The notes below the pieces were generated by a model. The model worked only from the letters and a program-made list of their open reading frames with translations. It ran no database searches and was not told where the DNA came from. Both the position numbers and the translations under genes were made by a program. A DNA stretch of 64,000 bases from Obrimoposthia wandeli (taxonomy: Eukaryota), in the NCBI GenBank assembly GCA_977020255.1, contig CDROCS010005043.1:1-64000 (forward strand), in the 5' to 3' direction. Position 1 is the stretch's first letter, and each line of letters starts with the position of its first letter. Shown here piece after piece: positions 22,900-60,236 of this stretch.

Positions 22900-22933
22900 C
22901 TTTCGATTACTTTCAAACAATGATATTCGAAAG
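22900..22933. promoter_or_regulatory. AgaR-type boxes upstream of kdgK-eda
   Basis: CTTTC at 22900 and 22910 (10-bp period), inverted GAAAG at 22929. Confidence 0.6.
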
Positions 22934-22944
22934 TCATAGTAAAT

Positions 22945-22966
22945 AAATAGAGCTAGATCACAAAGT
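22945..22966 (-). promoter_or_regulatory. Putative CRP site
   Basis: Minus strand reads TTTGTGATCTAGCTCTATTT, against the consensus TGTGATCTAGATCACA. Confidence 0.45.
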
Positions 22967-23034
22967 ATTTGATCTTGCTGTTAAAACGAGGATTAAATTG
23001 ACAGTTCACCGTTAAACCACAAACATCGAGTATG

Positions 23035-23065
23035 AAAAAAGGGTAAGTAGCAACTTACCCTTTTT
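23035..23065 (-). terminator. Terminator after the lipoprotein lyase
   Basis: aaaaaagggtaagt-agca-acttacccttttt. Confidence 0.85.
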
Positions 23066-23084
23066 ATAGTGGTGGTGGTGGTCG

Positions 23085-26000
23085 TTATTTTTGTTTTTTG
23101 AGCGTCACTTGCTGTGGTATACCAAAATAGCTTACAAATGTTAAAGAAGTATTATCACCAGATACACTCACTTTAACCTTATCGTTATCGGCAATCACAT
23201 CCCAGCGGCCTTGAATAACAACGGGAATATCCATTGGTATCGCCGCTGTATAACGCGTCATATTCAAGTCCGGAGTCACACCACTAATATTAATAGTGTC
23301 TTCACTCACTTGTCGTGTCATGACAATCGATGGTTTTGACATACTCACAACTAAACCATCGCTAAAGCTAGTGCCTGAAAAAGCACTATACGCGGTCGTT
23401 TTAGTTTCTATATCATAAACAACATGGGCATTATCGTCTTTTTGCAGTACTTGATAAGGCTTGTTACCCGCGGTAGTTTCAGCTGCAATACGTGCCATCG
23501 ATTCCGGCGTCGCATCAAGTATGGTTAAATACTCATACTCAGCATCATCAGGGGCATCCCCATGATTTAACCAAGCAACAGTAAAGTCGCCCTCTGTTGG
23601 TTTTTTACTTTGATTATGTGCTGATTTTTGATGCTGACGGCGTACTTCAAGTTCACCATCACTGACTAACACATAGCCATTACCTTGGCCGTCAATGAGC
23701 CAGTCACCTTTCGCTAATGTCGCAGTATAAGGAAAGGCGTCAATTTCTGTGCCATTCACCCATATACTATTCGACTTAGCTGTGTTCGCATGTTGGAACA
23801 ATGTCGTTTCAGTATTAAAACCATCACTACTGCTCTCGATATTGCTACCCAACATCACCAAACGGTTGTTCACCGAGAAGGTTGTTTTAAGCATTGAGAA
23901 ACCACTATCAAATTTTGCCGTAGATGGTGCTTGATGCTTAAACGCAAACATACCATATTGACCATCCAAACTTGATGCACCACTAAATGCTTGGTTACCA
24001 CGTAACATCAAGGTATGCGAATTTGGACTATCAAGTTGCTCTAGCGGTAAATGAATCGTCGTGGCTCCAGGGTTACGATTCCAATCCCAACCCGCTTCAA
24101 CAAAACCAACATCAGCTTGCTTTCCATAAGGCACAATCTGTACTGCACCGTGACTTTGATAGCGACCATAACGGTTATCACGATGATAGATCTCTGACGA
24201 CCAAACATTACTATTATACGCCTTCATCGTCACCATTTTGTCCTGATAACGGTGAATACCAAACGCACCACCATTAAACGCCCAATAACCTTGTGGGAGG
24301 CTTTCTGGTTCAACCCGTTCGCCAAATAATGCCACCGACTGGTCTGCCGTTTTACCTGTGATTTGTAAATATGCAGCAGCAAGTTCATGATCGACATCAC
24401 CATCACCAGACAAATCACCTGAAAGTGCTAACCAACGAAATGAATCTTGGAATGACGCTAATTTAGGTGGATTTAATGGGTGGCGTCCAGATAAGCCGAT
24501 ACCGACTTCAGGATTACTATATACCCAAGCTGATAACATCGCTTTTTTCAACGCTTTGCGACCCGTTTCACCGACTGCATACGGGGTACCACTGAGCATA
24601 TAAACCAGTTGAGCAGCATTTTTGAAAGCAGGAAATGAATAACCCGGATAGTTACCTTCATGACGCCACGCAGTACCATCTGGTCGTAAACCATCATAAC
24701 CACCAGGTGGTGTTTGCGACAATGCGATATCAATGTAATGACCAAATTTTTGCAATAAAGCAACTCGACGATTAATATCAGGTTCGAGCATTAACAATGC
24801 GAGATGTTGTCGTGACAAGGTATTGAAATAATCTAAGTTAGAACTTTCAAGTCCCGGTACCATATCAAAATTATCTTTAAATTCACGTGAATACCATAAT
24901 AAGGCATCATAAACAGGCTTACGTAAATCATGCTGAGTTAACACATCAGACATTAACATCGCTGAAATATACCACCAACGACCATAGTAACCCCAGTGGT
25001 GTGTCGTCACCAATGAACTGCCATCAACGAATCCCTGGTCTAGGATATGTTGTGTCATTAACACATACATATCTTCCAGCTCTTGTTTAATAATAGGGTC
25101 GTTCGTATTGTTCCATGCTCTACTGATATTTAGCAATAATGTAGAATATTTTCCTTGCGATACATAATCATCAATCAATTTTTTATCTGCGGGCTTTAAA
25201 TGCTCAGGCTGATAAATAACACGCTGTTTATTATTGATCAGATGACGGCCAGAAAGATTACCGTCACTGTCACGTTTGATTTCAAGAGCAGTGAATTCAG
25301 CGCGTAACGCATCTAAATCGGTATTTATTTTCAACCCTGTTTCACCCGCTATGTTAGTAAATACATTAACCAGTGAATTACGTACCAAGTTAGCAGTTGC
25401 AATTTCTTCAGCTGTTGCAACTGGAACAATTTTAGATAAGTTAAAATCAATTTCAGGGATTGTATAACGGGTTTTAACTTGATCATCAGACCATTGATAA
25501 CGAGAATCATCAACTGACAACATCACTCGATCTATATAAAAAGTACCATCTTCAGCATTGCGAGGGGCAGTAAAACGGATAGTATCCATATCACTGCGGA
25601 CACTACCAAAAATACTACTACTACCTAAGCCTTCGCCATCTTTATTGTCAGTCGGCGCGATACCTTCGACTTCTCGGCCTTGAATGTCATTCGCTAAAGA
25701 AACACCAACGGCTCGCCAACCGGTAAAATTCATATTGACACTAAAACCAGCATCAGCATCAGCGGTTCCAGTCAATCCACGACCTAAGTCAACCACAACA
25801 TCATCATCAACAGCGACTTCATTGTAAATCCAAAATGATAATACTTGCGTGCCTCGACGTCCCCAAGTCTTTTTCGCTTGGGCGTCAGTAATTAGCTTGA
25901 TCGGTTGATTGATAACAAAAGCACTGCTCTTTGTCCAATCCCATTGCAGAGAATGTCTGCCCATGATGTAACGCTTGTCACTCATCTGTAAAGTAGAGCC

Positions 26001-26186: not shown

Positions 26187-26212
26187 GAAATAACCTTACA
26201 ACTATGAGAGAA

Positions 26213-26234
26213 GCTTATGGGCTAACCCATAAGC
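26213..26234. other. Intercistronic 9-bp hairpin between autotransporter and lyase genes
   Basis: gcttatggg-ctaa-cccataagc, with only a weak U tail on the minus strand. Confidence 0.7.
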
Positions 26235-26241
26235 AGCTAAT

Positions 26242-28341: not shown

Positions 28342-28389
28342 AATTATCACTCTCAGAAATAAATTCAGATCAACTCACACAACACTGAC

Positions 28390-29322: not shown

Positions 29323-29663
29323 AACTTTTTATGACTCCCTAACGTTAAACTCAATGTGATTGTATATATTTTATAAACGCAATTTTAACGATTTCTCACT
29401 AAAAGTTTGTGATCAACCACCAATTATCGAAAGCAAACAAAAGAAACAAAGTAAGTAAAAGAAAAAGTTCAAAAAATATTAACTAATATTTAAATAAGAT
29501 CTAAAACATCATAAACTACTGGTTAATAAAGAATAAGTCGATTTAAATCGCTAGATTAGTAAGCATTGTTAAATTTACTGATCAACACCATGTCACAAAA
29601 CAGTTAATAAAAAGTATAAATACATTGAAATACATTTCATTAAAGCTTTAAAATCTTCACATA

Positions 29664-29698
29664 GAAAGACAAAGAAAGAAAAGGAAAGCAAAGGAAAG
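29664..29698. promoter_or_regulatory. Four AgaR-type GAAAG boxes upstream of the Ig-like lipoprotein
   Basis: GAAAG at 29664, 29674, 29684 and 29694, an exact 10-bp period. Confidence 0.7.
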
Positions 29699-29772
29699 AT
29701 AGGTTTGATGTATTAGTTCTACTAACCGTCAAATATAATTCTCTTATAATGAAACTACCCTAGGCAGGAATC

Positions 29773-32265
29773 ATGAAAAAAAGCTTTAAGTATTGCGCCA
29801 TTGCAATCGCCATTAGCAGTGTTCTTACAGGCTGTAATGACGAAGACACCACGAATTCAAATAACAATAACGGAAATCCTTACGTTGTACCGATCGCTTC
29901 TGATATAAGTATCTCTGGTGATAGTTACGTGAATTCAACGCTAACAGGTGAATATAAATTTATTGATCCGAACTATTCACCACGTGCAGAAGGCGCAAGT
30001 GCTTATAGCTGGAAAGTAGATGATCTTGATGGCGATAGAACTAATGATGTTGCCATTACGGGTGCAAATGAGCGCACCTTATTACTAGCTGATAATCAAC
30101 TAGACCAGTCTGTATATTTGTGTGTCACACCTGAAGCAACAGGTAACACAAATACGACTGGTGAAACGAAATGTTCAACGGCGAAATTGGTTCAATCAGC
30201 AAACGGCTCTAAACCCTCAGCAACAAGTGCTGTTATCGATAACACAACTCCGACAGTTGGCGACACCTTGACGGGTAGTTATGACTATGCCGATGCTGAT
30301 AACGATCTAGAAAGCGGTTCAACTTTCCGCTGGAAAGCCAGCGCGAATGACATTACGGGTGCGACGAGCATTACTCACACACTGACTAATCAGCAAGAAG
30401 GGAAAGTCATTGAGTTTTGTGTCACACCAACGTCTGCCAACCCAGATAGCATTTCTAATTACCCAACAATTGGCGATGAAGTGTGCTCTGCTGTTGATAC
30501 AGATGCAGTACAGGAAAAAGTAGGTGATGCGCCGACAGCAAATAATATTGTGATCACTGGTGATCACACGGTAGGCTCAACACTGACTCCAACCTACGCT
30601 TTCAGTGATGCTGATAATGATGCACAAGGCAGCAGTACCTTTAGCTGGAAACGCGGTTCAATCGAAGTAGCAACAACATTAGCTTATGAATTAGTAAGCG
30701 CGGATGTTGGTGCGAATATTACCTTTACTGTGACGCCCGTTTCAGCGACAGGGCTACCAACAAATGGTACACCTGTAGAATCTGGCGCGATAACCGACGT
30801 CGCGCAACCTTCAGGTCCAACACCGACAATCTCTTTAAAGGCAGTAGATAAAGCCGGTAAAGCTTACCCTGAAATTAACGATACATTGACCGGTGGTTAC
30901 ACTTACACCCCGTCAATAACCAACTCAGCAGATGAATCTACCGCGGTATGGAAAGCAGCAGGTGTACCGATCACCGATGTCACTTGTACTACCGGTTCCG
31001 ATTGTTCTTTAACGCTCACTGACACTTATTACAATAAAGACTTAACGTATTGTGTGACGCCGAAAGCAGTTGATAGCTCTGCAGGTACTGAGAAATGTAG
31101 CGCCATCGAAAAAGTCTATGGTGTAAAACTCTCTGGCACACTCGAGTTTGGTAAAGAGTTAAAACTAGACATATCGGGTTATAACAATCCAAAGGTTGAA
31201 TGGAAAGTCGACGTTAGTGATATTGAAGGCCCAACCAGTGATGATAATCGCACGCCGCGTAATCCAGTAAAAACCGGTGAAGCAGCAAAAACGTTCTTAA
31301 TTGGCGCTGAAGTATTGAAACAAATCATCAATACAGATCAAGCTAGTCTACTTGACTTAGATGCTACTATTGGTAACAAAAACGGGATTGTTGATGATGC
31401 CGATTGGGCACAAGCCTCTCTTTTAGGTAATGTCACTATGGACAGTGGTTCTGTTGATGCCAACGCCATTAATGCCGCGAACTACGTAGGTAAAGAAGTC
31501 GAAGTTACTGTCACATTTACTGAATCAAACGTAGATCCAGTTACCTTGATCGCGTCAAAAACAACTGAAGTACTCGGTGGCGTTTATTACGATACCAGTG
31601 ATGCAACCAAGCGTGGTATTGAGCCTGTAAGAGAATTAGTTTTCGGTACTCTGGTTTATCACCGTCCATTGACTGTGGCTGAAGCAACTCATAAAGCGGC
31701 TGTTGGTTTTGGTGCTAACGTAGCTTATCCGCGTTATTCAAAACCATCAGCAGGAATCAACTGGGGACTATATCGCGCAATAAAAGATGCATCAGATACT
31801 GCTGATAAGTACAACTCAGACTTCCCTGCGGTTGAATCTTGCTTGAATCTATATGATGAAGCGGCTAAGGATGTTTGGCATTTACCTGCAAGCCGTTATG
31901 ATTCAGCTTACACAGCAAACGGTTTTGCAGCCCAAGGCAATAAGCCACCAATGGAAACTGCCGATGAAAAGTATTCATTAATCCAATTGGCAAGCGCGAT
32001 CAACAAAAGTGATAACACAGTCAGAAATGGCTTACTCGGCACTTATATCGACCGTACAACGCCGAACGAGAAACTTAATTATACCATTTCACCGACGACT
32101 GGGTGGCTATTAAATGGCAATACTGGACTAACTGCTTTTTGGAGCGCTACGAAACCAAATTCAAGTTCATCGACAGCGAACTCGGTATTATTCACAGAAT
32201 CAGGTGGTTCAGGTAACAACGGTTTGACCAATGGCCGCTTTGTTTCATGTGTTAGAGCAAAATAA
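29773..32265 (+). CDS. Lipoprotein with four tandem Ig-like repeats and a C-terminal invasin/DUF823-like (C-type-lectin-like) domain
   Basis: Lipobox LTGC. Four ~95-aa repeats (VG.TLTG.Y...D...S...W...V/CTP...G...CS). The tip has YHRPLTVAE...W...C...WHLP...TGW...FWS...FVSCVR. Confidence 0.75.
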   Translation: MKKSFKYCAIAIAISSVLTGCNDEDTTNSNNNNGNPYVVPIASDISISGDSYVNSTLTGEYKFIDPNYSPRAEGASAYSWKVDDLDGDRTNDVAITGANERTLLLADNQLDQSVYLCVTPEATGNTNTTGETKCSTAKLVQSANGSKPSATSAVIDNTTPTVGDTLTGSYDYADADNDLESGSTFRWKASANDITGATSITHTLTNQQEGKVIEFCVTPTSANPDSISNYPTIGDEVCSAVDTDAVQEKVGDAPTANNIVITGDHTVGSTLTPTYAFSDADNDAQGSSTFSWKRGSIEVATTLAYELVSADVGANITFTVTPVSATGLPTNGTPVESGAITDVAQPSGPTPTISLKAVDKAGKAYPEINDTLTGGYTYTPSITNSADESTAVWKAAGVPITDVTCTTGSDCSLTLTDTYYNKDLTYCVTPKAVDSSAGTEKCSAIEKVYGVKLSGTLEFGKELKLDISGYNNPKVEWKVDVSDIEGPTSDDNRTPRNPVKTGEAAKTFLIGAEVLKQIINTDQASLLDLDATIGNKNGIVDDADWAQASLLGNVTMDSGSVDANAINAANYVGKEVEVTVTFTESNVDPVTLIASKTTEVLGGVYYDTSDATKRGIEPVRELVFGTLVYHRPLTVAEATHKAAVGFGANVAYPRYSKPSAGINWGLYRAIKDASDTADKYNSDFPAVESCLNLYDEAAKDVWHLPASRYDSAYTANGFAAQGNKPPMETADEKYSLIQLASAINKSDNTVRNGLLGTYIDRTTPNEKLNYTISPTTGWLLNGNTGLTAFWSATKPNSSSSTANSVLFTESGGSGNNGLTNGRFVSCVRAK

Positions 32266-32301
32266 TACTCACTAACTAACTAACACATATGAAGTATAGT
32301 T

Positions 32302-32346
32302 AATCTCGTCATGACAAGTAACTCTTGTTAATGACGAGATTTTTTT
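32302..32346 (+). terminator. Terminator after the Ig-like lipoprotein
   Basis: aatctcgtcat...atgacgagatt stem plus T run. Confidence 0.8.
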
Positions 32347-32493
32347 AATCAAATATTCATAATTTATATCAAGATCTGATTAACAGACCTTGCACATGAG
32401 CCTGCTAACCAAATGAATATGCCTTGTAATTAGCGCTACCCCACGATTTCACTTAGTTACACCAAAGTATACTTCACGCCCCACCCCCTAAAA

Positions 32494-32548
32494 CAAAGCC
32501 AAACAAAGAAAAACAAAAGCGATCGAAACCACAAAATTAAAATCGAAG
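32494..32548. promoter_or_regulatory. Degenerate 10-bp-phased (C/G)AAAG boxes upstream of the beta-helix gene
   Basis: CAAAG 32494, CAAAG 32504, CAAAA 32514, CGAAA 32524, CGAAG 32544. Confidence 0.45.
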
Positions 32549-32700
32549 CCATTCACAACTAACAAAAAAAACATGTCGTCCTGATAAAATAAACCTAATT
32601 CTATATATTACTCATTGAGCTTAACTGTTGACTCAACACTCAAACTAGGACAACAGTTGCTCAACATAACTCTTAACAACTTATATATGGTAAGAACTTT

Positions 32701-33825
32701 ATGAAACACATGAAAAAAGTAAAATCAATATTAGGACTTTCTCTTCTATATTTACCGCTTAGTGTGAGCGCTTCAGTCTGTGGTGTAGTAGGTGGGGGTT
32801 CAGTCCCTCTCACTATAGATCATGACACCGCAAAAACAGTGTCAATTACCACTTACACTGAATTACAAAGTGCGCTGTTAGCAGGGGAAAAACATATCTA
32901 CATTCCCGGCAACATCACAATTACGATCCCCAATAGCAAGAATGCGTTAATCATCCCTGAAGGGACAACTTTATTCAGTGACCGTGGAACGAATAATAGT
33001 CCAGGAGCTTTATTGCAAACCAACTACCTCAATGAGGCAGACAATTATTATGCCGTGATATCCATCGCGAGTAATGTCGAATTAAGTGGCTTAAGGATCC
33101 AAGGCCCAAATAGTAATATTGATACAGACAATCTGACCATTGGCATGCAGTCTGTCGCTGGCAGTAAAAATATCGCTATTACTAATAGTGAACTCTATGC
33201 TTGGCCTGGCGCTGCGTTATCACTAAAAACATCGTTGAATGCAGAAATTAGCTACAGCTATATTCATCACAACAGAAAATCATCACGTGGTTATGGTGTT
33301 GTCGTACAAAACGGTAGTACATCAGCAGCAATATACTGCAATGTATTTGATGCCAACCGTCATAGTATTGCTGGTTCAGGGCAGTCTGGAGAATCTTATA
33401 CCGCGTCTTACAACCTGGTACTGCCAGAAGGTAAAGGCCATGCGTTTGATATGCATGAAAGCTCCGACCCAGCAAGTAAGATAGGTGGTAGTTATGTCAA
33501 TATAAGTAACAACTGGTTAGATTTTGGCGGTACAAAGTGGGGGCATTATCCGTCGATAAATGTGCGTGGAATACCAGAAGTTGGCGCGGCAACGATTCAG
33601 AAAAATCATTTCACATCAGCAATACAATATCTTGATGGCGGAGCCAGAACGAAACGCCCAATTGAAGGCGTATCTGGCGCGATAGCTGCAGATAATACAT
33701 TAAAAAGTAACAATGAATTTGATGTTAATTTTAACTATGCCAATGATGGTCAACAGTGTTCTTTCAGTTATGGTTCGATGACACAGCAAGTTAATTGTAC
33801 AGCTGTAAGTTCAGTATTACCTTAA
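32701..33825 (+). CDS. Secreted right-handed beta-helix (pectin-lyase-fold) protein, function unknown
   Basis: Signal peptide. Repeats with Asn/Ile ladders (VELSGLRIQG, IAITNSEL, ISYSYIHHN, IYCNVF..NRHSIAG, HAFDMH, VNISNNW). Confidence 0.7.
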   Translation: MKHMKKVKSILGLSLLYLPLSVSASVCGVVGGGSVPLTIDHDTAKTVSITTYTELQSALLAGEKHIYIPGNITITIPNSKNALIIPEGTTLFSDRGTNNSPGALLQTNYLNEADNYYAVISIASNVELSGLRIQGPNSNIDTDNLTIGMQSVAGSKNIAITNSELYAWPGAALSLKTSLNAEISYSYIHHNRKSSRGYGVVVQNGSTSAAIYCNVFDANRHSIAGSGQSGESYTASYNLVLPEGKGHAFDMHESSDPASKIGGSYVNISNNWLDFGGTKWGHYPSINVRGIPEVGAATIQKNHFTSAIQYLDGGARTKRPIEGVSGAIAADNTLKSNNEFDVNFNYANDGQQCSFSYGSMTQQVNCTAVSSVLP

Positions 33826-37932: not shown

Positions 37933-37969
37933 AAAAAAAGCCGACCAAACAAAATGTTTAATCAGCTTT
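37933..37969 (-). terminator. Terminator after GH105
   Basis: Minus strand aaagctgattaaac-atttt-gtttggtcggcttt (G-U pairs) plus U run. Confidence 0.7.
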
Positions 37970-44698: not shown

Positions 44699-45862
44699 TT
44701 ATTTGTTAAATTTATGAATCGTCACACCTTGAACCACTCGGTTTACTTCACCGGTTGGGCAAGGGTTGTCAGGTGTATTGCCTAACTCTACTGACAGATG
44801 GAATGCATAAATTTGTGCCACTAAGATGTAAGAAAAAAGTAGTCCAGCATCTGTTGCATCTTGCATATCATCAGCAAGCCAGTAATCACCGTTACTCACT
44901 TGATTATCAAGTTGAGCTGTAATCGCAATTACTTTATTAGCAATGCCATCACGGCGTAATTCAGCTAATAAATCTAAATCATATTTACGGGTTTGTGGGT
45001 TATTTGAGATATAAACAAAAATTAATGTTTTATCATCAACAATCGATTTCGGTCCGTGGCGGAAGCCAAGCGGAGAATCGAAACTAATCACAACCTTACC
45101 GGCAGTCAGTTCAAGTAATTTTAATGCAGACTCTTCAGCCACACCTTTAAAACCACCACTCCCGAGGTAAATAACTTTGTTTACTTCAGTGTTGTCTATT
45201 GTACCGATAAATTTATTAATTTCTTTGACCTGCGCCTCAGAATGCTTACAAATACTTTCGATATCTTTCAACTTGAACTCGCCGTCACCTAATATCGAAA
45301 AAGCAGAGAGCATCATTGAAGAGAAACTAGAGGTCATTGCGAACGATTTATCATTGGTTTGCGCTGGCATTAATACCGCTAATGATTTGCTGTCAGTTTT
45401 ACTTGCTACGTATAACTGACCTTCGTTATTACAAGTCAGTACTAAGTGGTAACAATTACTCAAGCATTCATTGGCTAGGTTTACCGCTTCTACACTTTCA
45501 GGGCTGTTACCTGAACGTGCAAACGATACTAATAGTGTCGGGATATCTTCAGCAAAGTACTGATAAGGGTTTGATACAATATCAGTCGTTGATACTGCTT
45601 CAACACGGCGTTGAGTTTGCTGTGTTAAAATAGGAGCAAGTGAACGACCAACAAATGCAGATGTACCAGCACCAGTTAATACAATACGTAAATCACGATG
45701 TGCTAGAATCGGCGTCATAAAATCATTAATTAACGCGCTATTTCGTTCTAAAATTGCTTTTGTTTCACGCCAGCATTCAGGTTGTTGTTCGATCTCTTTC
45801 GCTGTCCAGAAGCCTTTTAATTGTTCTAATTCTGTCGCGCTATAACCCAAGTAATTACTCAT
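44699..45862 (-). CDS. agaS: Galactosamine-6-phosphate deaminase/isomerase (SIS domains)
   Basis: WTAKEI.QQP, TGAGTSAF, SFARSGNSPES, FAMTSSF, GFRHGPKS, PCPTGEVNRVVQGV. Confidence 0.95.
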   Translation of the reverse strand: MSNYLGYSATELEQLKGFWTAKEIEQQPECWRETKAILERNSALINDFMTPILAHRDLRIVLTGAGTSAFVGRSLAPILTQQTQRRVEAVSTTDIVSNPYQYFAEDIPTLLVSFARSGNSPESVEAVNLANECLSNCYHLVLTCNNEGQLYVASKTDSKSLAVLMPAQTNDKSFAMTSSFSSMMLSAFSILGDGEFKLKDIESICKHSEAQVKEINKFIGTIDNTEVNKVIYLGSGGFKGVAEESALKLLELTAGKVVISFDSPLGFRHGPKSIVDDKTLIFVYISNNPQTRKYDLDLLAELRRDGIANKVIAITAQLDNQVSNGDYWLADDMQDATDAGLLFSYILVAQIYAFHLSVELGNTPDNPCPTGEVNRVVQGVTIHKFNK

Positions 45863-45885
45863 ATCTCTAATCCTTTAATTCAAAT

Positions 45886-47209: not shown

Positions 47210-47986
47210 TCAATCTTCCTTTTCGACAATAATCACTTCAACTTTCATATCTCGAAGACCTTCTACGTACTCGTCCGGGATACCTGAATCAGTAACTAAT
47301 ATGTCAATTTTACCGAACTCGCGAATCATATGACAGCTACGTTTTCCAAACTTACTGGAATCGGCAACTGCAATCACTTGTTCAGAAATATCACACATCA
47401 AACGATTAAGACTTGCTTCTTGTTCGTTATGAGTAGTGATACCGGCACGCAAATCAAAACCATCGACCCCTAAAAACAACTTATCGAAACAGTAATTTTT
47501 AAGACCTTGTTCTGCTTGTGAACCACTAAAAGAAAGTGCATTCTTACGGAGAATACCCCCGGGCATCAACACTTCAATTCCAGGTGCTGATGCTAACTCC
47601 ATCGCTACATCCAGACCATTGGTCATAACCACTGCACTGCCAATTGATTTTAGGCTAGAGGCAATCTCTTTTGCAGTAGTTCCCGAATCTAGAATAACAG
47701 TGTCACCACTATTGATAAGTTTTGCTGCAGCTTGACCAATCCGAGTTTTAATGTCGGGGTTATGCCGACGTTTCTCATGAACAGTCAATTCTGCAACAAC
47801 CCCAATATTTGGAATCGCAGCACCATGTGATCGAACCACATAACCGCTACTTTCCAGAAAACTAAGGTCACTTCGAATCGTGACACTAGAGACATTAAAT
47901 AGTGCAGCAAGGTCTTCAACGCGGGCTTTACCGTCTCGGTTAACCACATTGATGATTTCCATGCGCCTTTCGACAGCACTTTTCAT
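47210..47986 (-). CDS. agaR: DeoR-family repressor AgaR
   Basis: ERR..II...G.A.V..LA..F.VS.VTIR.DL HTH, DSGTT, VMTNG, DSSKFG; directly upstream of kbaZ. Confidence 0.93.
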   Translation of the reverse strand: MKSAVERRMEIINVVNRDGKARVEDLAALFNVSSVTIRSDLSFLESSGYVVRSHGAAIPNIGVVAELTVHEKRRHNPDIKTRIGQAAAKLINSGDTVILDSGTTAKEIASSLKSIGSAVVMTNGLDVAMELASAPGIEVLMPGGILRKNALSFSGSQAEQGLKNYCFDKLFLGVDGFDLRAGITTHNEQEASLNRLMCDISEQVIAVADSSKFGKRSCHMIREFGKIDILVTDSGIPDEYVEGLRDMKVEVIIVEKED

Positions 47987-48089
47987 AAAACTTGTCTCCC
48001 AACAAAACTAAAAATTAATAAAACCTTTCGCTTTGCTTCGAGTGAAGAATACACCCTAAAACGAAAGGAACAATATAAAAAACAAAAAC

Positions 48090-48141
48090 CTTTGAAGTCT
48101 TTCACAAACTTTCAATTTCTTTCAATTCATTCCGAACTTTA
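48090..48141. promoter_or_regulatory. AgaR operator array upstream of agaR-kbaZ
   Basis: CTTTC at 48099, 48109 and 48119 (10-bp period) flanked by CTTTG 48090 and CTTTA 48137; further boxes at 48025 and GAAAG at 48356, 48382, 48417. Confidence 0.7.
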
Positions 48142-48457
48142 CATTTACATTTTCGAAAAACGAAAATATCACTTAATGAGTACGTAACCAACTGATTTTA
48201 CGTTAAATTCAAAAATAAAAATAGAAATACGTGATAAAAATGACTATTACCATGCTTCTTAGCGCATATTTTATCACGTAATATCGCGTAATAAGGTTAC
48301 ATCCCCCACAGAAACACCTTCAAAGTGAAAACCATTTTGTTTACACTTATATAACGAAAGTGAACGTATACGTTAAAATATGAAAGTTAGATACGAAAAT
48401 AACTGTTAACGACAACGAAAGCAATAATTTCATGCCTCTACATTAAAAATCATCGAT

Positions 48458-49933: not shown

Positions 49934-49973
49934 GGTTATACACCTATTAATAATGAATGGATAACATGCATAT

Positions 49974-50003: not shown

Positions 50004-50040
50004 TAGTGCTATTATTATGGTCTACGGAATCAAATAAAAA

Positions 50041-51654: not shown

Positions 51655-51707
51655 CTGTCACTCCTTTCAGTTAAAAATTAGAATTATTCAGCCCGCAATC
51701 ATTAATC

Positions 51708-52952: not shown

Positions 52953-53127
52953 GGCATACCTCTAGAGTAAATAAGAAAAAGAATAACGAAAGTAAATATA
53001 TTCCCAATCTAGATCAGACGCACTTAACTTCAAAAGAAAATATACGAGAGATCCGGATATGAAAGGAATCGTTTAAATAAAAATAACCATCAGCAAATAT
53101 AGGCTCAATACTGGTTATCTTTACATA

Positions 53128-54930: not shown

Positions 54931-55044
54931 ATTTCACTCCTTATTTTAGGTGATTAACATACTGAAAAGACATCAATATAGCGGTGGATAATAAGCCACT
55001 TATTAACTAATTGTTGTGATCGCCATCAATAAAATAAACCAAAC

Positions 55045-55275
55045 GAAAGCATTCGAAGAACCACTTGATAAAATGAACACAAATAAATCAACTCAATTTT
55101 ATTTATTATTTTTATCCAAGATATCATTAACACAGCTTAACAACGCGATTTGTTAACGCTACGCTTATCACAAAATAAATATAAAAATAAAAAATGGCAT
55201 ATCCGAAAATAACTAATTAACTTACAATGAAAATAATCGAAACAAACATAACAATAAAAACCTTCATTAACTTTC
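55045..55275. promoter_or_regulatory. Paired AgaR-type boxes in the MCP/lyase divergent region, plus possible CRP site at 55015-55030
   Basis: GAAAG/GAAGA 55045/55055, GAAAA/GAAAC 55229/55239, CCTTC/CTTTC 55261/55271; TGTGA-N6-TCAAT at 55015. Confidence 0.5.
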
Positions 55276-55303
55276 ACTCAATGATTTTTATTTTTACTGC
55301 AAT

Positions 55304-58300
55304 ATGCCGGGAAAGTCTATGCCATCACTTAGTCGCCATACTAATCGCTTAATAAAAAAATCTCTTTTTTTATTAAGCGTTCTACTGCCAACGATTAGCC
55401 ATGCCAACAGTTTAACTGCAGATATTTTCAGTTTTGAAGCAAGCCAAAAACCAAGCTGGATATCTGGCGAACAAGTTGCTCTCTCAACAAAACGCGCCGT
55501 ACTCGGACAACAATCACTGTACTGGCAATGGCAACAACCAAGTGCAGAATTAGCCCTGAATAACCTTGGTATTCAACGCCTCAGCGATAAACAGGCCACA
55601 GATGCTTATGTGAGTAATGCAACGCAAGTCCTGTCTTTTTGGATTTATAATGAAAATGCTATCGATGCGTCTTTAACCGTGACGCTTCATGACGATACAC
55701 AAAGTAAAGTAACTAACTTTCCTGTACTGCTTAATTTCACCGGTTGGCGCGCGATTGGTGTCTCACTGAATCTTGATTTAGACAAAAGCTTTAAAGATAC
55801 TGCTGAACTATCACGTATCACATTCACATCCCCGACTAAAGTAGGGATGACAACAGGGGCACTGTATCTCGACCGTATTATGGTTTCTGTCGATGATTAC
55901 CGCTATCAATGGTCAGATTCTCAAGTCACGACACGCATAACTGAACCTGAAATTGATTTTGAATTACCTGCAGATCTACCTGAACCATCAGTATCAGAAC
56001 TGGAGGATGCCGAATTAATTAAACAAACGATTATTACTGAATTTAGCGGAGATCCTGGCTCAATAAGTACACTGGAAAGTCGATTTTCCAATTTCAACAT
56101 CAGTAAAGATAATAATGGCGTGATCCGTGGGCGCCATCTGTTAACAGCTAAACAGCAAATAATTTATCAACCCAATAATTTGACAGCCGCTGATAAAATT
56201 GATTTCAATGAATACGCTATACTCGATGACGGCGATAGCAAGGGAAATAAAGCTTCAGGTTACAGTAAGTTAATGTTAGATATCGCCAAGGCCTATCACA
56301 ACCCTAAGTACAGCGGTGATAAAGTACGTCTTAGTAGCATGTATCAGTTAATGACAGAACACCTACTCGATCAGGGTTTTGCGGATGGCAGTTCTTTGGT
56401 CACCACCCATCACTGGGGTTATGCAGGTCGTTGGTGGTATATATCGGCGCTCATGATGGAACAAACATTAACGGACAATCAGTTACTTGATCCGGTCTAC
56501 AAAGCATTATTATGGTTCTCACGAGAGTTCAAAGAGAGCTTTGATATGAAATTAACCACAACAAGTTCTAATCTCGATTACTTTAATACCTTATCTCGTC
56601 AACATTTAGCGCTACTGTTACTCAATCCTGATGACAAAGAACGTATTGCCCTATTGCATAAATTTAGTACTTTCTTTTCTGGTGCGTTAGCGCAAACGCC
56701 CCCTGGCACCAATGATGGTTTCCGCCCTGACGGTACCGCATTCCGTCACCACGGCAACTACCCAGGTTATGCTTTCCCGGCTTTCCAAAATGCCGGTCAT
56801 GTTATTTATATGCTACAAGATACCGAATTCAGTATTAATAAAGCCGGTATGGATAAACTAAAATTAGTGATGCAAGCCGGTTGGAACTACACCAATGCCG
56901 TCGTGCCACTAAGCATTGCGGGTCGCCATCCTTTCACAACATTAGGAGTGAAAAACTACGCAAATGCATTAAAGTGGGTTGCGAACAGTTATCCTCAGGT
57001 TGATGAAGAATTAGCGGCTGTTTATTTACAAGTCATGGGCATTAGCGAGCAAAACAGTGCTACTCATTTCGGCAAAACAATTAAACCGGCCGTATTACCA
57101 CAAGGCAGCTGGAGTTATAACGGCGGTGCATTTACCGTCCACCGTAGTGGCGAACGCATGGCAATGGTCAAAGGTTATAATAAAGATGTTTGGTCTGCAG
57201 AGATCTACACCAAGGATAATCGCTTTGGTCGCTATCAAAGTCACGGTAGCGTACAAGTGTTCCCTTACGGCAATCCCGTCGATTACGGCTTTAAACAAGA
57301 AGGCTGGGATTGGAATCGTAACCCAGGTACCACGACGATCCATCTGCCTCTATCACAATTAGAAAGTCCTAAAACGTCAACAGTAATGGTGCGTTCAGAA
57401 GAAGGCGTTAGTGGCGCAGTATCACTGCAAGATAAATACGGATTATTTACTTTTAAACATAAAGCGCCGAGTAACATCACCAATTTTGAATCCAGCTTTG
57501 TAGCCCATAAACAAGTGCTTACCAATGGCGATAAATTATACCTAACGGGTAACAACATCAGTAATACCGATGGTATCAACAGCACAGAGACAACCCTGTT
57601 CCAACTGGCGATTACCAGTAAATCACAAGGTCTGTTTATCAATAATGATAAACGCATAACGAATGATACATTCAGCACTGAAATAACATCAGGTGACTGG
57701 ATCATTGATGATAACGGAGTCGGCTATTACTTGATCAATGCACCCAAGGTTAATGTACAAAGAAAAATGCAAAGTTCTAAGCATAATAAAACTAAAGCAG
57801 ATACTTTAGGGCGATTCTCCTCCGCTTGGATAGATCACGGTACTGCACCAGATAAAACCAGTTATGAATATATTATGGTGATGCAAGCCACACCGCAACA
57901 AATGATAGCATTAGCGCAAGAAATGCAGAACGGACCACTATTTAAAGTCTTAACCGAAGACCTAGATAAGCAAGTAGTCTGGAGTAAAACCGATAATTTA
58001 TATGGCTATACAAGTTATATTGCGAGTACCTTTAACCAAGGACCAATAAAAAAGATTGAGACCACAGCTTTAGTATTAGCAAAAATAACCACAGATAAAC
58101 TTCATTTGAGTGTATCTGCACCAGAATTAAATCTCACGAACAATGGTAGTCCGGTGCAAGCAATACCAGTAATTTTCGAGATAAATGGTTTATGGCAAAC
58201 AGACGATACGACCTTCAGCCATACAGCTAACAGCACCATCATCACTGCTGAAAGTTTATTCGGTCAATCCGTTAATATCAGCTTACGGCCTGTTGACCCT

Positions 58301-58426
58301 GTTGACCCTGTTGACCCTGTTAAACCCGTTGACCCTGTAGATCAACCAAAAGACACAGGTGGTTCATTCAACTTCAGCTTGTTAGCTTTCCTTGGGCTGA
58401 TTATGGCCTTTAGAATTAAATTATAA
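55304..58426 (+). CDS. Chondroitin sulfate ABC lyase, cABC-I-like (PL8), with C-terminal GlyGly-CTERM sorting signal
   Basis: Sec signal; THHWGY, GFRPDGTAFRHHGNYPGY, AGRHPF, WSAEIY..DNRFGRYQSHG; ends in Pro-rich linker plus TGGSFNFSLLAFLGLIMAFRIKL. Confidence 0.93.
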   Translation: MPGKSMPSLSRHTNRLIKKSLFLLSVLLPTISHANSLTADIFSFEASQKPSWISGEQVALSTKRAVLGQQSLYWQWQQPSAELALNNLGIQRLSDKQATDAYVSNATQVLSFWIYNENAIDASLTVTLHDDTQSKVTNFPVLLNFTGWRAIGVSLNLDLDKSFKDTAELSRITFTSPTKVGMTTGALYLDRIMVSVDDYRYQWSDSQVTTRITEPEIDFELPADLPEPSVSELEDAELIKQTIITEFSGDPGSISTLESRFSNFNISKDNNGVIRGRHLLTAKQQIIYQPNNLTAADKIDFNEYAILDDGDSKGNKASGYSKLMLDIAKAYHNPKYSGDKVRLSSMYQLMTEHLLDQGFADGSSLVTTHHWGYAGRWWYISALMMEQTLTDNQLLDPVYKALLWFSREFKESFDMKLTTTSSNLDYFNTLSRQHLALLLLNPDDKERIALLHKFSTFFSGALAQTPPGTNDGFRPDGTAFRHHGNYPGYAFPAFQNAGHVIYMLQDTEFSINKAGMDKLKLVMQAGWNYTNAVVPLSIAGRHPFTTLGVKNYANALKWVANSYPQVDEELAAVYLQVMGISEQNSATHFGKTIKPAVLPQGSWSYNGGAFTVHRSGERMAMVKGYNKDVWSAEIYTKDNRFGRYQSHGSVQVFPYGNPVDYGFKQEGWDWNRNPGTTTIHLPLSQLESPKTSTVMVRSEEGVSGAVSLQDKYGLFTFKHKAPSNITNFESSFVAHKQVLTNGDKLYLTGNNISNTDGINSTETTLFQLAITSKSQGLFINNDKRITNDTFSTEITSGDWIIDDNGVGYYLINAPKVNVQRKMQSSKHNKTKADTLGRFSSAWIDHGTAPDKTSYEYIMVMQATPQQMIALAQEMQNGPLFKVLTEDLDKQVVWSKTDNLYGYTSYIASTFNQGPIKKIETTALVLAKITTDKLHLSVSAPELNLTNNGSPVQAIPVIFEINGLWQTDDTTFSHTANSTIITAESLFGQSVNISLRPVDPVDPVDPVKPVDPVDQPKDTGGSFNFSLLAFLGLIMAFRIKL
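58289..58342 (+). repeat. Six tandem 9-bp units encoding the PVD/PVK linker
   Basis: cctgttgac x3, cctgttaaa, cccgttgac, cctgtagat. Confidence 0.9.
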
Positions 58427-58527
58427 TCTAACCATATTTGGTAATAAGACATTCTGCTCTTATTACCAAATCATCAGATCATTACTTTTATAGTCTTTAT
58501 TTTGAGACCTTATTAAGGAAACTAGAA

Positions 58528-60087
58528 ATGTCGATTTCACGCCGCGATTTACTTAAAGGCATTGCAATTACAGGTGCGGGAGCCGCTGCAGTTGCAACAA
58601 CAGGATGCAGCTCACTGACTTCCAGTAACGCGATTACGCCAAAAGCCGTTCCGGGTAAAAAGCCTAATTTACTTATTGTTTTCCCTGATGAGATGCGAAC
58701 TCATGCGATGGAATTCATGAAGCAAGACCCATCACATACACCCAACATCAACAAGTTTGCCAAAGAAGGCGTGCATTTAAAACAGGCTGTATCTAACTTC
58801 CCGTTATGTACACCATTTCGCGGTATGTTAATGACGGGTCAGTATCCGGTTCGCAGTGGTATTCAAGGTAACAGTCATACGCCTATGCCAGGTAAATACG
58901 GTGGTAGTGACTTTGGTATTGAGCTCAACCGTAATGCATTAACCTGGTCTGGCATCATGAAAGAACAAGGTTATAGCATGGGTTATATTGGCAAGTGGCA
59001 TCTTGATGCACCGCACGCACCATTTGTACCAAGTTATAATAACCCAATGGAAGGCAAATATTGGAACGACTGGACACCACCTGAACGTCGCCACGGTTTT
59101 GATTTTTGGTACGCATACGGTACCTATGATTTACACATGAATCCGATTTATTGGACCAATAATACGCCGCGTGATAAACCGCTGCAGATCAATCAGTGGA
59201 GCCCTGAACATGAAGCCGATATCGCGATCAAATATTTACGTAATGAAGATGGTAAATACCGTGAGGATGACCAGCCGTTTAGCTTAGTTATATCAATGAA
59301 TCCACCGCATTCACCATATGACCAGGTACCACAGAAATATTTGGACCGATATAAAGATGATACGTCTGAAAGTCTCAATACCCGTCCAAACGTACAGTGG
59401 GATAAAGAATATACCGAAGGTTATGGGCCTAAATTCTTTAAAGAATACATGGCAATGATCAATGGTGTTGATGAGCAATTTGGCCGCATAGTCGATGAGT
59501 TAGACAGCCTACAGTTAGCTGAAGATACCCTAGTGGTCTTCTTCTCTGATCACGGTTGCTGCATGGGCTCAAACGGTAAACCAACCAAGAATGTACACTA
59601 TGATGAATCCATGCGTATCCCAATGATCTTCCGTTGGCCAGGCACACTTGCTGCACAAGACAGTGATATTTTATTCTCAGCACCTGATATTTATCCGACC
59701 ATGTTAGGTCTGTTAGGTATGGAAGATTTGATCCCAGATACGGTTGAAGGTACCAACTTTGCTAATACCGTACGTGGTATTAAAGGTGATAAACAGCCAA
59801 CATCACAGTTCTATACCTTCATGCCATACGGCGCTCAATCTTATGGTCGACGCGGAATAAGAACAGATCGTTATACCTTGGTGGTTGATCGTCGAATTGC
59901 AAAACCACTCAGCTATATTTTGCATGATAATCAAAACGACCCTTACCAAATGAGTAATATTGCCGAAGGTAATGACGAACTGATCCACCAACTTATCGTC
60001 GCAGAACTCATGCCATGGCTTGAACACACTGGTGATCCTTGGCGTCCAACCGAGGTGCCTGAAAGCGTGATGAATGCTTATACTTAA
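58528..60087 (+). CDS. Tat-exported S1 sulfatase (possible lipoprotein); candidate chondroitin 4-O-sulfatase
   Basis: ATG 58528 after AAGGAA; SRRDLLK Tat motif and TTGC; PNLL...DEMR, CTPFRG (CxPxR), GYIGKWH, NPPH.PY, SDHG. Specificity is inferred. Confidence 0.9.
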   Translation: MSISRRDLLKGIAITGAGAAAVATTGCSSLTSSNAITPKAVPGKKPNLLIVFPDEMRTHAMEFMKQDPSHTPNINKFAKEGVHLKQAVSNFPLCTPFRGMLMTGQYPVRSGIQGNSHTPMPGKYGGSDFGIELNRNALTWSGIMKEQGYSMGYIGKWHLDAPHAPFVPSYNNPMEGKYWNDWTPPERRHGFDFWYAYGTYDLHMNPIYWTNNTPRDKPLQINQWSPEHEADIAIKYLRNEDGKYREDDQPFSLVISMNPPHSPYDQVPQKYLDRYKDDTSESLNTRPNVQWDKEYTEGYGPKFFKEYMAMINGVDEQFGRIVDELDSLQLAEDTLVVFFSDHGCCMGSNGKPTKNVHYDESMRIPMIFRWPGTLAAQDSDILFSAPDIYPTMLGLLGMEDLIPDTVEGTNFANTVRGIKGDKQPTSQFYTFMPYGAQSYGRRGIRTDRYTLVVDRRIAKPLSYILHDNQNDPYQMSNIAEGNDELIHQLIVAELMPWLEHTGDPWRPTEVPESVMNAYT

Positions 60088-60099
60088 TAAGATAGATCA

Positions 60100-60131
60100 T
60101 AATCAGTACTTCTTTGCGTAAGTACTGATTA
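60100..60131. terminator. 12-bp hairpin after the sulfatase (probable terminator)
   Basis: taatcagtactt-8 nt-aagtactgatta. Confidence 0.65.
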
Positions 60132-60199
60132 TTACGACGTGATTCAAAATTTTTATGCCATTATGCATTTGTTACATAAAAATGAAAAAACAAGAGTTA

Positions 60200-60236
60200 G
60201 AAACCAATCGCAAATACAAACGAAGGGAATTGAAGG
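60200..60236. promoter_or_regulatory. Degenerate phased boxes upstream of the phosphodiesterase-like gene
   Basis: GAAGG at 60222 and 60232, GAAAC at 60200. Confidence 0.35.

What the first reader, a model, noticed from the sequence alone, without database searches (positions are those of the whole stretch)
22900..60236. Helically phased CTTTC/GAAAG arrays place most of the locus, orphan genes included, in one AgaR-type regulon
Seen: exact 10-bp-period pentamer arrays at 22900/22910, 29664/74/84/94, 48099/109/119 and 55261/55271, with degenerate ones at 29429+, 32494-32548, 55045/55055, 55229/55239 and 60222/60232. I noticed none in the core-gene intergenic regions of 1-20 kb. Established: proteobacterial AgaR binds CTTTC direct repeats spaced by 5 bp. 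Inference: a GalNAc-phosphate-sensing repressor has taken over uronate genes (no KdgR in the window), an adhesin, a chemoreceptor and beta-helix proteins. This is independent sequence evidence that the orphans belong to the pathway. The degenerate sites are weak given the AT-rich background.
Basis: partly seen in the sequence, partly recalled or inferred. Interest (0 to 1): 0.7.

Follow-up and report, generated by a model that had tools for sequence, protein, structure and literature searches.

The report
AgaR operator arrays in chondroitin locus
Short CTTTC boxes repeated every 10 bases in front of several operons of a marine bacterium's chondroitin-sulfate-degrading gene cluster are real, conserved in related bacteria and very probably the binding sites of the cluster's own AgaR repressor, a known kind of switch that here controls a larger set of genes.

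Summary
The window is a Moritella-like bacterial contig inside a 1.35-Gb eukaryote assembly. Positions 20.5-64 kb are a chondroitin sulfate (CS) utilisation locus with an AgaR repressor.

The exact period-10 CTTTC/GAAAG arrays at 22900 (x2), 29664 (x4) and 48099 (x3) are confirmed. There are 7 exact doublets against 0.10 in shuffles and 0-1 at most other spacings. The site at 55261/55271 has one mismatch.

In the closest genome, 8 of 17 doublets lie on the two CS contigs. AgaR-less Moritella genomes show only background counts. The boxes are conserved at orthologous promoters in Moritella, Photobacterium and Vibrio, and they match the box pattern of the E. coli promoters reported to bind AgaR.

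The regulon reading is well supported for:
- agaR to GH88
- OMP-autotransporter-chondroitinase
- orf830
- kdgK-eda

Support is moderate for MCP/chondroitinase-2. There is none for the beta-helix genes (32494), the phosphodiesterase (60222) or the DUF4955-metallophos-orf259 group, which follows a terminator.

Both motif and regulator were already known; only the regulon content appears new. No binding or expression data exist.

The parts
47210..47986 (-). agaR, DeoR-family repressor. It is the first gene of the operon agaR-agaZ-agaS-PTS IIBCDA-agaA-kduI-kduD-GH88 (47986 down to 38004).
   Evidence: Pfam HTH_DeoR + DeoRC. NCBIfam AgaR equivalog: 409.6 bits against a cut-off of 260. 48% identity to E. 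coli AgaR. HTH residues V32 S33 V35 T36 I37 R38 D40 L41 are invariant across Moritella, Photobacterium, Yersinia and E. coli.
48099..48123 (-). Three exact boxes at period 10, lying 113-137 bp upstream of the agaR ATG. This is the core autoregulatory operator. A 1-mismatch CRP-like site (48091-48106) overlaps its first box.
   Evidence: An identical triple array occurs in the Moritella MAG, a double in G015 and Photobacterium, and a single conserved tgtGAAAGag in Y. ruckeri at the same relative place.
48025..48421 (.). Five further single exact boxes in the agaR upstream region (48025, 48063, 48356, 48382, 48417), giving 8 boxes in 471 bp.
   Evidence: 8 observed against 0.78 expected, P = 2e-6. 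All 40 box positions are identical in the MAG, against 81% identity for non-box positions.
29664..29698 (+). Four exact GAAAG boxes at period 10, lying 75-109 bp upstream of orf830. They begin about 10 bp after a promoter-like match (TTGAAA-18-TAAAAT, 29625-29654).
   Evidence: The MAG has three boxes at the orthologous place, with changed spacers. Upstream regions of the orf830 family are box-dense in 10 of 10 Moritella/Vibrionaceae loci.
29429..29453 (+). OMPbb-proximal degenerate array (GAAAG, AAAAG, then an A-rich unit) next to TGTGATC (29408). It lies upstream of the OMPbb-autotransporter-ChABC_1 operon (29322 down to 23085).
   Evidence: Not significant by itself. The block TGTGA...GAAAa-caaac-GAAAG-aaaac is, however, conserved between Moritella and two Photobacterium species.
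22900..22933 (.). kdgK-eda-DJ1 promoter: CTTTC x2 at period 10 (22900, 22910), plus an inverted GAAAG at 22929 and TGTGATC at 22956.
   Evidence: The MAG has the same three-box layout, with 15/15 box positions conserved against 73% of non-box positions. Photobacterium and V. fujianensis carry box pairs upstream of agaY-kdgK.
52988..53065 (-). Internal promoter before anSME-sulfatase1-DUF2264. Two single boxes (52988, 53061); the first abuts a TATATT -10-like hexamer.
   Evidence: The architecture TGTGATCT ... cgTATATT + CTTTCGTT is conserved in the window, the MAG and three Photobacterium species. Two of those Photobacterium species have exact period-10 doublets there.
55045..55059 (+). MCP-proximal GAAAG-cattc-GAAGA, next to TGTGATC (55015). 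Probable but weaker operator.
   Evidence: The same 15-mer occurs in the MAG's MCP/ChABC_2 intergenic region at another position, and CTTTC-gattc-GAAGA occurs in P. proteolyticum. The region as a whole is not enriched for boxes: 2 against 0.56 expected.
55261..55275 (+). CCTTC + CTTTC, lying 29-43 bp upstream of ChABC_2. One mismatch. Possible operator.
   Evidence: Not conserved in the MAG alignment.
45245..45269 (-). Exact doublet inside the agaS coding sequence. Possible intragenic operator.
   Evidence: Kept in 7 agaS genes of 3 genera although the residues change. The preceding codon always ends in G (L/M/S/P/A), and the Ser/Arg after Glu always uses an AGN codon.
37937..37969 (-). Terminator-like hairpin (15 pairs plus a T-run) after GH88. 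It separates DUF4955-metallophosphatase-orf259 from the agaR operon.
   Evidence: z = -3.5. A clear terminator sits after GH88 in G015 as well.
32494..32548 (+). Period-10 AAAACAAAGA repeat upstream of the beta-helix gene at 32701. Not supported as an operator.
   Evidence: No exact box in 435 bp. TRF finds 2.8 copies. The Psychromonas orthologue has no such array.
60222..60236 (+). GAAGG x2 upstream of the phosphodiesterase gene. Not supported as an operator.
   Evidence: No exact box in the region. Sites of this class occur at background frequency.

Best explanation
The exact CTTTC/GAAAG boxes are operators of the locus-encoded AgaR repressor (DeoR family). Extended consensus: CTTTC, a purine, then a T-rich stretch. 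They occur as direct repeats one helical turn apart.

Inferred mechanism:
- AgaR oligomers occupy two to four boxes on one face of the DNA at or just downstream of the promoters. Further single boxes may allow cooperative binding or looping.
- This holds at least five transcription units off: agaR-agaZS-PTS-agaA-kduID-GH88, OMPbb-autotransporter-chondroitinase ABC_1, orf830, kdgK-eda-DJ1 and anSME-sulfatase1-DUF2264. MCP and ChABC_2-sulfatase2 are probably included.
- Repression is relieved when a phosphorylated amino-sugar intermediate made from imported chondroitin breakdown products binds the C-terminal domain.
- TGTGATC(T) half-sites next to the boxes suggest cAMP-CRP co-activation.

Shown here: the sequence pattern, its statistics, its locus specificity, its conservation, and the identity of the regulator. 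Inferred: binding itself, repression, the effector, and the promoter positions.
For: - Non-random arrays: 7 doublets against 0.10 expected, and only at spacing 10.
- Genome-wide specificity. The Moritella MAG (4.1 Mb) has 17 doublets, 8 of them on the two CS contigs (57 kb), and most of the rest are inside ORFs. Four AgaR-less Moritella genomes have 9-13 doublets each, with no clustering.
- Footprinting. Box positions are 89% conserved between the window and the MAG, against 71% for other positions (P = 1.4e-4). Spacers change while the boxes stay.
- Recurrence. Across the chondroitinase loci of Moritella, Photobacterium, Vibrio and Y. ruckeri there are 21 spacing-10 doublets, against about 0.1 per locus at other spacings. 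None occurs in the Bacteroidota, Verrucomicrobiota, Colwellia or Thalassotalea loci.
- Box density. It is 4.0x the composition expectation upstream of CS/aga genes, against 1.8x elsewhere. The highest values are for agaR (9x) and orf830 (8x).
- Same signature in E. coli. The promoters reported to bind AgaR carry 7 boxes each, 20-28 per kb against 2.7 per kb nearby, at 10/11-bp phasing (PMC3668189 citing Ray and Larson 2004).
- Regulator identity. NF040755 scores 409.6 bits and the recognition helix is invariant. It is the only transcription factor found in the window.
Against: - There are no binding or expression data. No RNA run holds this DNA.
- Promoter positions are consensus guesses, and only orf830 has a clear match.
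- The MCP/ChABC_2 region is not box-enriched and its boxes are poorly conserved, 5 of 10.
- Enterobacterial chondroitinase loci (Salmonella, Proteus, Y. ruckeri) lack box enrichment upstream of OMPbb although those genomes encode AgaR. Regulon membership is therefore lineage-specific.
- In G015, kdgK has no boxes.
Confidence: 0.8

Rival explanations
1. The boxes bind a regulator other than AgaR, encoded outside this 66.6-kb contig. Alternatively, they act as phased A-tract curved DNA (a target for nucleoid proteins) in an AT-rich, horizontally acquired island.
For: Only 66.6 kb of this bacterium's genome is available. GAAAG/AAAAG units at period 10 would bend DNA. The locus is mosaic, with modules present or absent between Moritella genomes.
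Against: The G and C flanking the A/T triplet are strictly kept while the spacers drift, which curvature alone would not require. The same boxes mark the E. coli AgaR promoters. The agaR promoter itself carries the densest set, in three Moritella genomes. AgaR-less Moritella genomes show no clustering.
Confidence: 0.08
2. Only the agaR-proximal operator is functional. The arrays before orf830/OMPbb and kdgK are 10-bp tandem repeats produced by slippage and have no regulatory role.
For: TRF reports them as period-10 tandem repeats. Copy number varies: 4 against 3 before orf830, and 3, 3 and 2 before agaR.
Against: The spacers inside one array differ from each other, so the units are not recent copies. 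The arrays sit at orthologous promoters in different genera with different spacers. Intergenic doublets are essentially absent outside the CS/aga loci.
Confidence: 0.08
3. The arrays are chance matches in an AT-rich background.
For: The pentamer is short and intergenic DNA is A/T-rich. The degenerate sites are indeed at background frequency.
Against: 7 doublets against 0.10 expected, with none of 300 shuffles reaching 3. 3 triplets against 0. Enrichment is confined to spacing 10. The arrays are also conserved and locus-specific.
Confidence: 0.01

Closest known systems
E. coli AgaR and its operators at the agaR, kbaZ (agaZ) and agaS promoters (Ray and Larson 2004, as cited in PMC3668189)
   Same: The repressor is orthologous: 48% identity, same domains, invariant recognition helix. 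It is autoregulated and linked to agaZ, agaS, a mannose-family PTS and agaA. The operators are built from CTTTC boxes followed by a purine and a T-rich stretch, repeated at about one helical turn, several per promoter.
   Different: E. coli mixes 10- and 11-bp spacings and uses degenerate ATTTC/GTTTC units. Here the arrays have strictly 10-bp spacing, with up to four perfect boxes. The E. coli regulon is limited to GalNAc/GalN uptake and catabolism. Here the boxes also precede chondroitin lyases, outer-membrane and surface proteins, sulfatase maturation genes and KDG catabolism genes.
Comparative-genomics AgaR regulons of Proteobacteria with the CTTTC motif (Leyn et al. 2012, J Biol Chem 287:28047)
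   Same: As I recall the abstract, candidate AgaR motifs share a CTTTC consensus found in multiple copies and arrangements upstream of aga genes. That is what is seen here.
   Different: The paper is not held in the library, so I could not check whether it or RegPrecise already lists chondroitin lyase, sulfatase or kdgK genes as AgaR targets in Vibrionaceae or Moritella. No held paper describes such a link.
Other DeoR-family repressors that bind tandem direct repeats (for example GlpR, and FruR of Lactococcus; from my own knowledge)
   Same: An N-terminal HTH plus a sugar-phosphate-sensing DeoR C-terminal domain. Oligomers bind several adjacent repeats, and the inducer is a phosphorylated pathway intermediate.
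   Different: The box sequences and the pathways differ. The effector of AgaR is unknown (PMC4694137).

Membership tests
AgaR repressor (DeoR family, NCBIfam NF040755) | N-terminal DeoR-type HTH plus a DeoR C-terminal sensor domain | tested here: met
   PF08220 (E = 3.6e-14) and PF00455 (E = 2e-51).
AgaR repressor (DeoR family, NCBIfam NF040755) | Score above the curated equivalog cut-off | tested here: met
   409.6 bits against a cut-off of 260. The next best model, PRK09802, falls below its own cut-off.
AgaR repressor (DeoR family, NCBIfam NF040755) | Encoded next to GalNAc catabolic genes (agaZ, agaS, mannose-family PTS, agaA) | tested here: met
   agaR is followed on the same strand by KbaZ/AgaZ, AgaS, EIIB/C/D/A and a NagA/AgaA-type deacetylase.
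AgaR repressor (DeoR family, NCBIfam NF040755) | Represses transcription, and is released by a GalNAc-pathway metabolite | not testable with these tools
   No expression data: no RNA run holds the locus. The effector is unknown even in E. coli (PMC4694137).
AgaR operator (CTTTC-box arrays) | CTTTC core with a purine and a T-rich 3' flank | tested here: met
   Over 79 boxes from 16 promoter regions, position +5 is A or G in 82%, and +6 to +9 are T-rich. The E. coli boxes read CTTTCGTTTT.
AgaR operator (CTTTC-box arrays) | Several copies per promoter, phased about one helical turn apart | tested here: met
   Arrays of x2, x3 and x4 at exactly 10 bp. E. coli uses 10/11 bp.
AgaR operator (CTTTC-box arrays) | Present in the regulator's own promoter and conserved in orthologous promoters | tested here: met
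   8 boxes upstream of agaR, P = 2e-6. They are conserved in three Moritella genomes, two Photobacterium species and Yersinia.
AgaR operator (CTTTC-box arrays) | Bound by AgaR protein | not testable with these tools
   This needs EMSA, footprinting or ChIP.
KdgR (IclR-family) control of uronate/KDG genes | An IclR-family regulator in the locus | tested here: not met
   No IclR/HTH_IclR hit in any ORF of 100 aa or more in the window. The rest of this bacterium's genome is not available.
cAMP-CRP co-activation | A TGTGA-N6-TCACA palindrome at about -41 or -61 | tested here: inconclusive
   Conserved TGTGATC(T) half-sites flank the boxes at the OMPbb, MCP, kdgK and anSME promoters. Full palindromes are not enriched, however (27 against 38.8 expected), and TGTGATC is over-represented across the whole window.

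The most novel reading that the evidence does not exclude
In Moritella and Vibrionaceae, AgaR is the master switch of a complete non-Bacteroidota chondroitin sulfate utilisation system. Through one box type it would co-regulate the secreted PL8 lyases, their autotransporter-type barrel and OMP partners, an Ig-repeat surface protein (orf830), sulfatases with their maturase, a locus-specific chemoreceptor, the PTS, and KDG catabolism. An additional intragenic operator inside agaS is kept at synonymous sites across three genera and might serve looping or act as a roadblock.
Probability: 0.4. Interest if true: 0.55.

Novelty: new member of a known kind. Interest (0 to 1): 0.42.

Why it matters
It gives sequence-based, cross-species evidence that several uncharacterised genes are expressed together with the chondroitin lyases and the GalNAc pathway. 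These genes are the outer-membrane barrel pair, the orf830 Ig-repeat protein and DUF2264, and probably the chemoreceptor. This narrows their likely roles to glycosaminoglycan capture, export or sensing.

It also shows how a narrow sugar regulon (GalNAc in E. coli) can grow into a polysaccharide-utilisation regulon simply by gaining box arrays at new promoters. Finally, it offers well-defined operators for binding and reporter experiments: a perfect four-box array and a three-box array.

It is not a new mechanism.

Tried and rejected
- Background from the window's own assembly. G000 is a 1.35-Gb eukaryote assembly with many tandem repeats, so its counts say nothing about the bacterium. I used the Moritella MAG, a complete Moritella genome and AgaR-less Moritella genomes instead.
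- Leyn et al. 2012 could not be read, by DOI or by PMC id. Literature searches were swamped by 'agar' the gel and found no paper linking AgaR to chondroitin loci.
- Sigma-70 consensus scans gave a usable promoter only for orf830.
- The CRP palindrome search was not enriched.
- RNA evidence: no RNA run holds the locus.
- Degenerate arrays as a class were rejected as evidence.
- ATCAC/GATCA spacing-10 doublets turned out to be scattered coding coincidences.
- I did not build a full PWM. Every training site was chosen for an exact core, so such a model would be circular.


Full report
**What the window is.** The window is the first 64 kb of a 66.6-kb contig (C5043) in a 1.35-Gb, 6912-contig assembly, so the assembly is that of a eukaryote. 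The contig itself is bacterial. Its proteins are 80-99% identical to those of a Moritella metagenome-assembled genome, 'the MAG' below (chondroitinase 84%, AgaR 99%), and to a complete Moritella genome, G015 (AgaR 97%). The same DNA is found in food, ice and marine metagenomes.

**Gene content.**
- Positions 1-20 kb hold core genes: hemA, lolB, ispE, prs, pth, ychF, a tRNA array, miaB, phoH, ybeY, corC and lnt.
- Positions 20.5-64 kb are a chondroitin sulfate (CS) utilisation locus.
- It contains two intact chondroitinase ABC-type PL8 lyases and a third that is split.
- It contains two sulfatases with an anaerobic sulfatase-maturing enzyme, plus GH88, KduI, KduD and KdgK-Eda.
- It contains the GalNAc genes agaZ, agaS, a mannose-family PTS and agaA.
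- It has one transcription factor, AgaR.
- It has several poorly characterised genes: OMP barrel, autotransporter barrel, orf830, DUF2264, DUF4955 beta-helix, another beta-helix, a metallophosphatase, orf259 and a chemoreceptor.

**The observation.** The pair at 55261/55271 is CCTTC + CTTTC, so it is not exact. One more exact doublet lies inside agaS at 45255.
- Same-strand pentamer pairs occur 7 times at spacing 10. They occur 0-1 times at every other spacing from 5 to 40, apart from the harmonics at 20 (3) and 30 (1) and a count of 3 at 35 that I did not examine.
- 300 dinucleotide shuffles give a mean of 0.10 doublets (maximum 2) and no triplets, against 3 triplets observed.
- CTTTC is the top pentamer of all 512 for this statistic.
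- No doublet, exact or with one mismatch, lies in 1-20 kb.
- Exact boxes are enriched in three intergenic regions. Upstream of agaR there are 8 against 0.78 expected (P = 2e-6). In the OMPbb/orf830 divergent region there are 5 against 0.82 (P = 1.5e-3). Upstream of kdgK there are 3 against 0.53 (P = 0.017).
- The regions at 32266-32700 and 60088-60281 hold no exact box, and 54931-55303 holds 2 against 0.56 expected.
- Degenerate doublets are at background frequency, and exact arrays do not fade into degenerate in-phase units.

**Genome-wide specificity.**
- The host assembly is useless as a background.
- The MAG (4.1 Mb) has only 17 exact doublets. Eight lie on its two CS contigs (57 kb). Five of the others sit inside long ORFs.
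- Only 2 of 13 Moritella species genomes encode AgaR.
- Four AgaR-less Moritella genomes have 9-13 doublets each, scattered, many with spacers that recur between genomes as conserved coding sequence would. This is a background of about 2-2.6 per Mb, or about 0.15 per 64 kb.
- G015 has a reduced locus, DUF2264-agaR...GH88-kdgK-eda, without lyases. It keeps the agaR-promoter doublet and the agaS doublet, has no boxes before kdgK, and is otherwise at background.
- The arrays are therefore not equally frequent genome-wide.

**Conservation.**
- Between the window and the MAG, 80 of 90 box positions are identical, against 71% of the other intergenic positions (P = 1.4e-4).
- Upstream of agaR the triple array is identical in the MAG. 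It is a double in G015 and Photobacterium. In Y. ruckeri a single tgtGAAAGag sits at the same relative place.
- Before orf830 the MAG has three boxes with different spacers.
- Before kdgK the three-box layout is the same in the MAG, with four spacer substitutions and no box substitution. Photobacterium and V. fujianensis have box pairs before agaY-kdgK.
- Across the chondroitinase loci of Moritella, Photobacterium, Vibrio and Y. ruckeri, 21 doublets occur at spacing 10, against about 0.1 per locus at other spacings. The Psychromonas, Salmonella, Proteus and Moellerella loci have no exact doublet, and neither do the Bacteroidota, Verrucomicrobiota, Colwellia and Thalassotalea loci.
- Box density upstream of CS/aga genes in the gammaproteobacterial loci is 4.0 times the composition expectation, against 1.8 times elsewhere. 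It is highest for agaR (9x), orf830 (8x), the sulfatase divergent from agaR (6x), OMPbb (5x) and anSME (4x).

Upstream of anSME there is an internal promoter whose architecture is conserved in the window, the MAG and three Photobacterium species. It consists of TGTGATCT, then about 30 bp, then cgTATATT directly followed by CTTTCGTT. Two of those Photobacterium species carry exact period-10 doublets there. In the window the boxes are single (52988, 53061), so period-10 arrays are not the whole descriptor of the regulon.

**Who binds the boxes.**
- The regulator at 47210-47986 has the DeoR HTH and DeoR C-terminal domains. It passes the NCBIfam AgaR equivalog (409.6 bits, cut-off 260) and is 48% identical to E. 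coli AgaR.
- The recognition-helix residues are invariant from Moritella to E. coli.
[quoted passage not shown] Those two regions hold 7 exact boxes each, 20-28 per kb against 2.7 per kb in the surrounding 15 kb, with 10- and 11-bp phasing and the flank CTTTCGTTTT.
- The extended consensus of 79 boxes from Moritella, Vibrionaceae and Yersinia promoters is the same: CTTTC, a purine, then a T-rich stretch, with in-phase TTC and TT echoes at -8 to -6 and +11/+12.
- As I recall the abstract of Leyn et al. 2012, CTTTC in multiple copies and arrangements is the predicted proteobacterial AgaR motif. I could not read the paper.

**Which genes are covered.**

| Support | Transcription units |
|---|---|
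| Well supported | agaR to GH88 (11 genes) |
| Well supported | OMPbb-autotransporter-ChABC_1 |
| Well supported | orf830 |
| Well supported | kdgK-eda-DJ1 |
| Well supported | anSME-sulfatase1-DUF2264 |
| Moderate | MCP and ChABC_2-sulfatase2 |
| None | beta-helix gene at 32701 |
| None | phosphodiesterase site at 60222 |
| None | DUF4955-metallophosphatase-orf259 |
| None | the split third lyase |

- The four-box array before orf830 starts about 10 bp after a promoter-like -10.
- The well-supported units make up 21 of about 31 genes in the locus.
- For MCP/ChABC_2, the 15-mer GAAAG-cattc-GAAGA recurs in the MAG and in near-identical form in P. proteolyticum, next to a conserved TGTGA block. 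The region is not box-enriched, however, and aligns poorly.
- The beta-helix gene at 32701 has only a CAAAG tandem repeat upstream, no exact box, and no footprint in Psychromonas.
- DUF4955-metallophosphatase-orf259 begins after a 15-pair terminator-like hairpin downstream of GH88 and has no boxes. Read-through cannot be excluded.
- In Salmonella, Proteus and Y. ruckeri the OMPbb upstream regions are not box-enriched, although the Salmonella and Proteus genomes score over the AgaR cut-off and Y. ruckeri has agaR in the locus. The wider regulon is therefore a Moritellaceae/Vibrionaceae feature.

**Mechanism.**
- Shown: box arrays at promoters, specific to and conserved with an AgaR-encoding CS locus.
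- Inferred: AgaR oligomers bind adjacent boxes on one DNA face and repress. A phosphorylated intermediate produced after lyase action, desulfation, PTS uptake and GH88 cleavage releases AgaR. Conserved TGTGATC(T) half-sites hint at CRP co-activation, but the palindrome test is inconclusive.

**Novelty.** The regulator and the box type were already known. The extension to lyases, outer-membrane and surface proteins, sulfatase maturation and KDG genes in Moritella and Vibrionaceae is not described in any paper I could search. It may be partly present in Leyn et al. 2012 or RegPrecise, which I could not read. I rate it a new member of a known kind, of moderate interest.

**Caveats.**
- Only 66.6 kb of this bacterium's genome is available.
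- The contig has fragmented prfA and prmC genes at 378-2557, which suggests local indel errors.
- All regulatory statements are sequence inference.

Noticed in passing
window 1-64000 (contig C5043, 66.6 kb): The contig is bacterial (Moritella-like) but sits in a 1.35-Gb eukaryote assembly, so it comes from a contaminant or an associated bacterium. Near-identical DNA occurs in food, ice and marine metagenome runs. Earlier scan notes mention Colwellia contigs in the same assembly.
   Followed up: partly
window 45245-45269 (inside agaS): An exact CTTTC doublet lies inside the agaS coding sequence. It is kept in 7 agaS genes from Moritella, Photobacterium and Yersinia although the residues change: the preceding codon always ends in G, and Ser/Arg always uses AGN. 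It may be an intragenic AgaR operator.
   Followed up: partly
window 52953-53127: The internal promoter before anSME is conserved across genera: TGTGATCT, a spacer, then cgTATATT directly followed by CTTTCGTT. It is a likely CRP-dependent promoter with an AgaR box at the transcription start.
   Followed up: partly
window 378-2557: The essential genes prfA (RF-1/PCRF domains) and prmC are present only as several short ORFs in different frames. This suggests indel errors near the contig end, or gene decay.
   Followed up: partly
window 9012-10175: An array of nine tRNA genes made of three repeated kinds, in the 2-kb stretch without ORFs.
   Followed up: no
window 61283-64185 (minus strand): A third PL8 chondroitinase-like gene is split. 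The N-terminal and catalytic parts are in one frame (62956-64185) and the C-terminal sandwich domain in another (61535-62458), with about 500 bp between them that match nothing. The Moritella MAG shows the same split.
   Followed up: partly
L029:525-3645 (Moritella MAG contig C235): The MAG carries an extra divergent gene pair that the window lacks: an autotransporter-barrel protein and an OprD-family porin. Its promoter (GTGA-N6-CACA, a GAAAG doublet, TATATAAT) is also conserved in Photobacterium (L039).
   Followed up: partly
G015:C1:3616000-3630400 (loci L043-L044): A complete Moritella genome has a reduced locus: DUF2264, agaR to GH88, and kdgK-eda, with no lyases, sulfatases or outer-membrane genes. 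It looks like a scavenger of CS or hyaluronan disaccharides. Its agaR upstream region holds a (GTAAAT)x6 microsatellite.
   Followed up: partly
window 20569-66567 and Moritella loci L001, L013, L028, G015 region: No kbaY/agaY-type class II tagatose-bisphosphate aldolase gene was found, although agaZ is present. Photobacterium and V. fujianensis place agaY just upstream of kdgK.
   Followed up: partly
window 29773-32265 (orf830): There is a weak match to the ZirU family (NF040485, 56 bits, below cut-off) and an Ig-like domain hit. The gene family recurs next to chondroitinases in Moritella, Photobacterium and Vibrio, always behind box-dense DNA.
   Followed up: partly
window, whole: TGTGATC is over-represented throughout the window, 25 occurrences against 8.8 expected, in coding as well as intergenic DNA. 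The reason is unknown.
   Followed up: no
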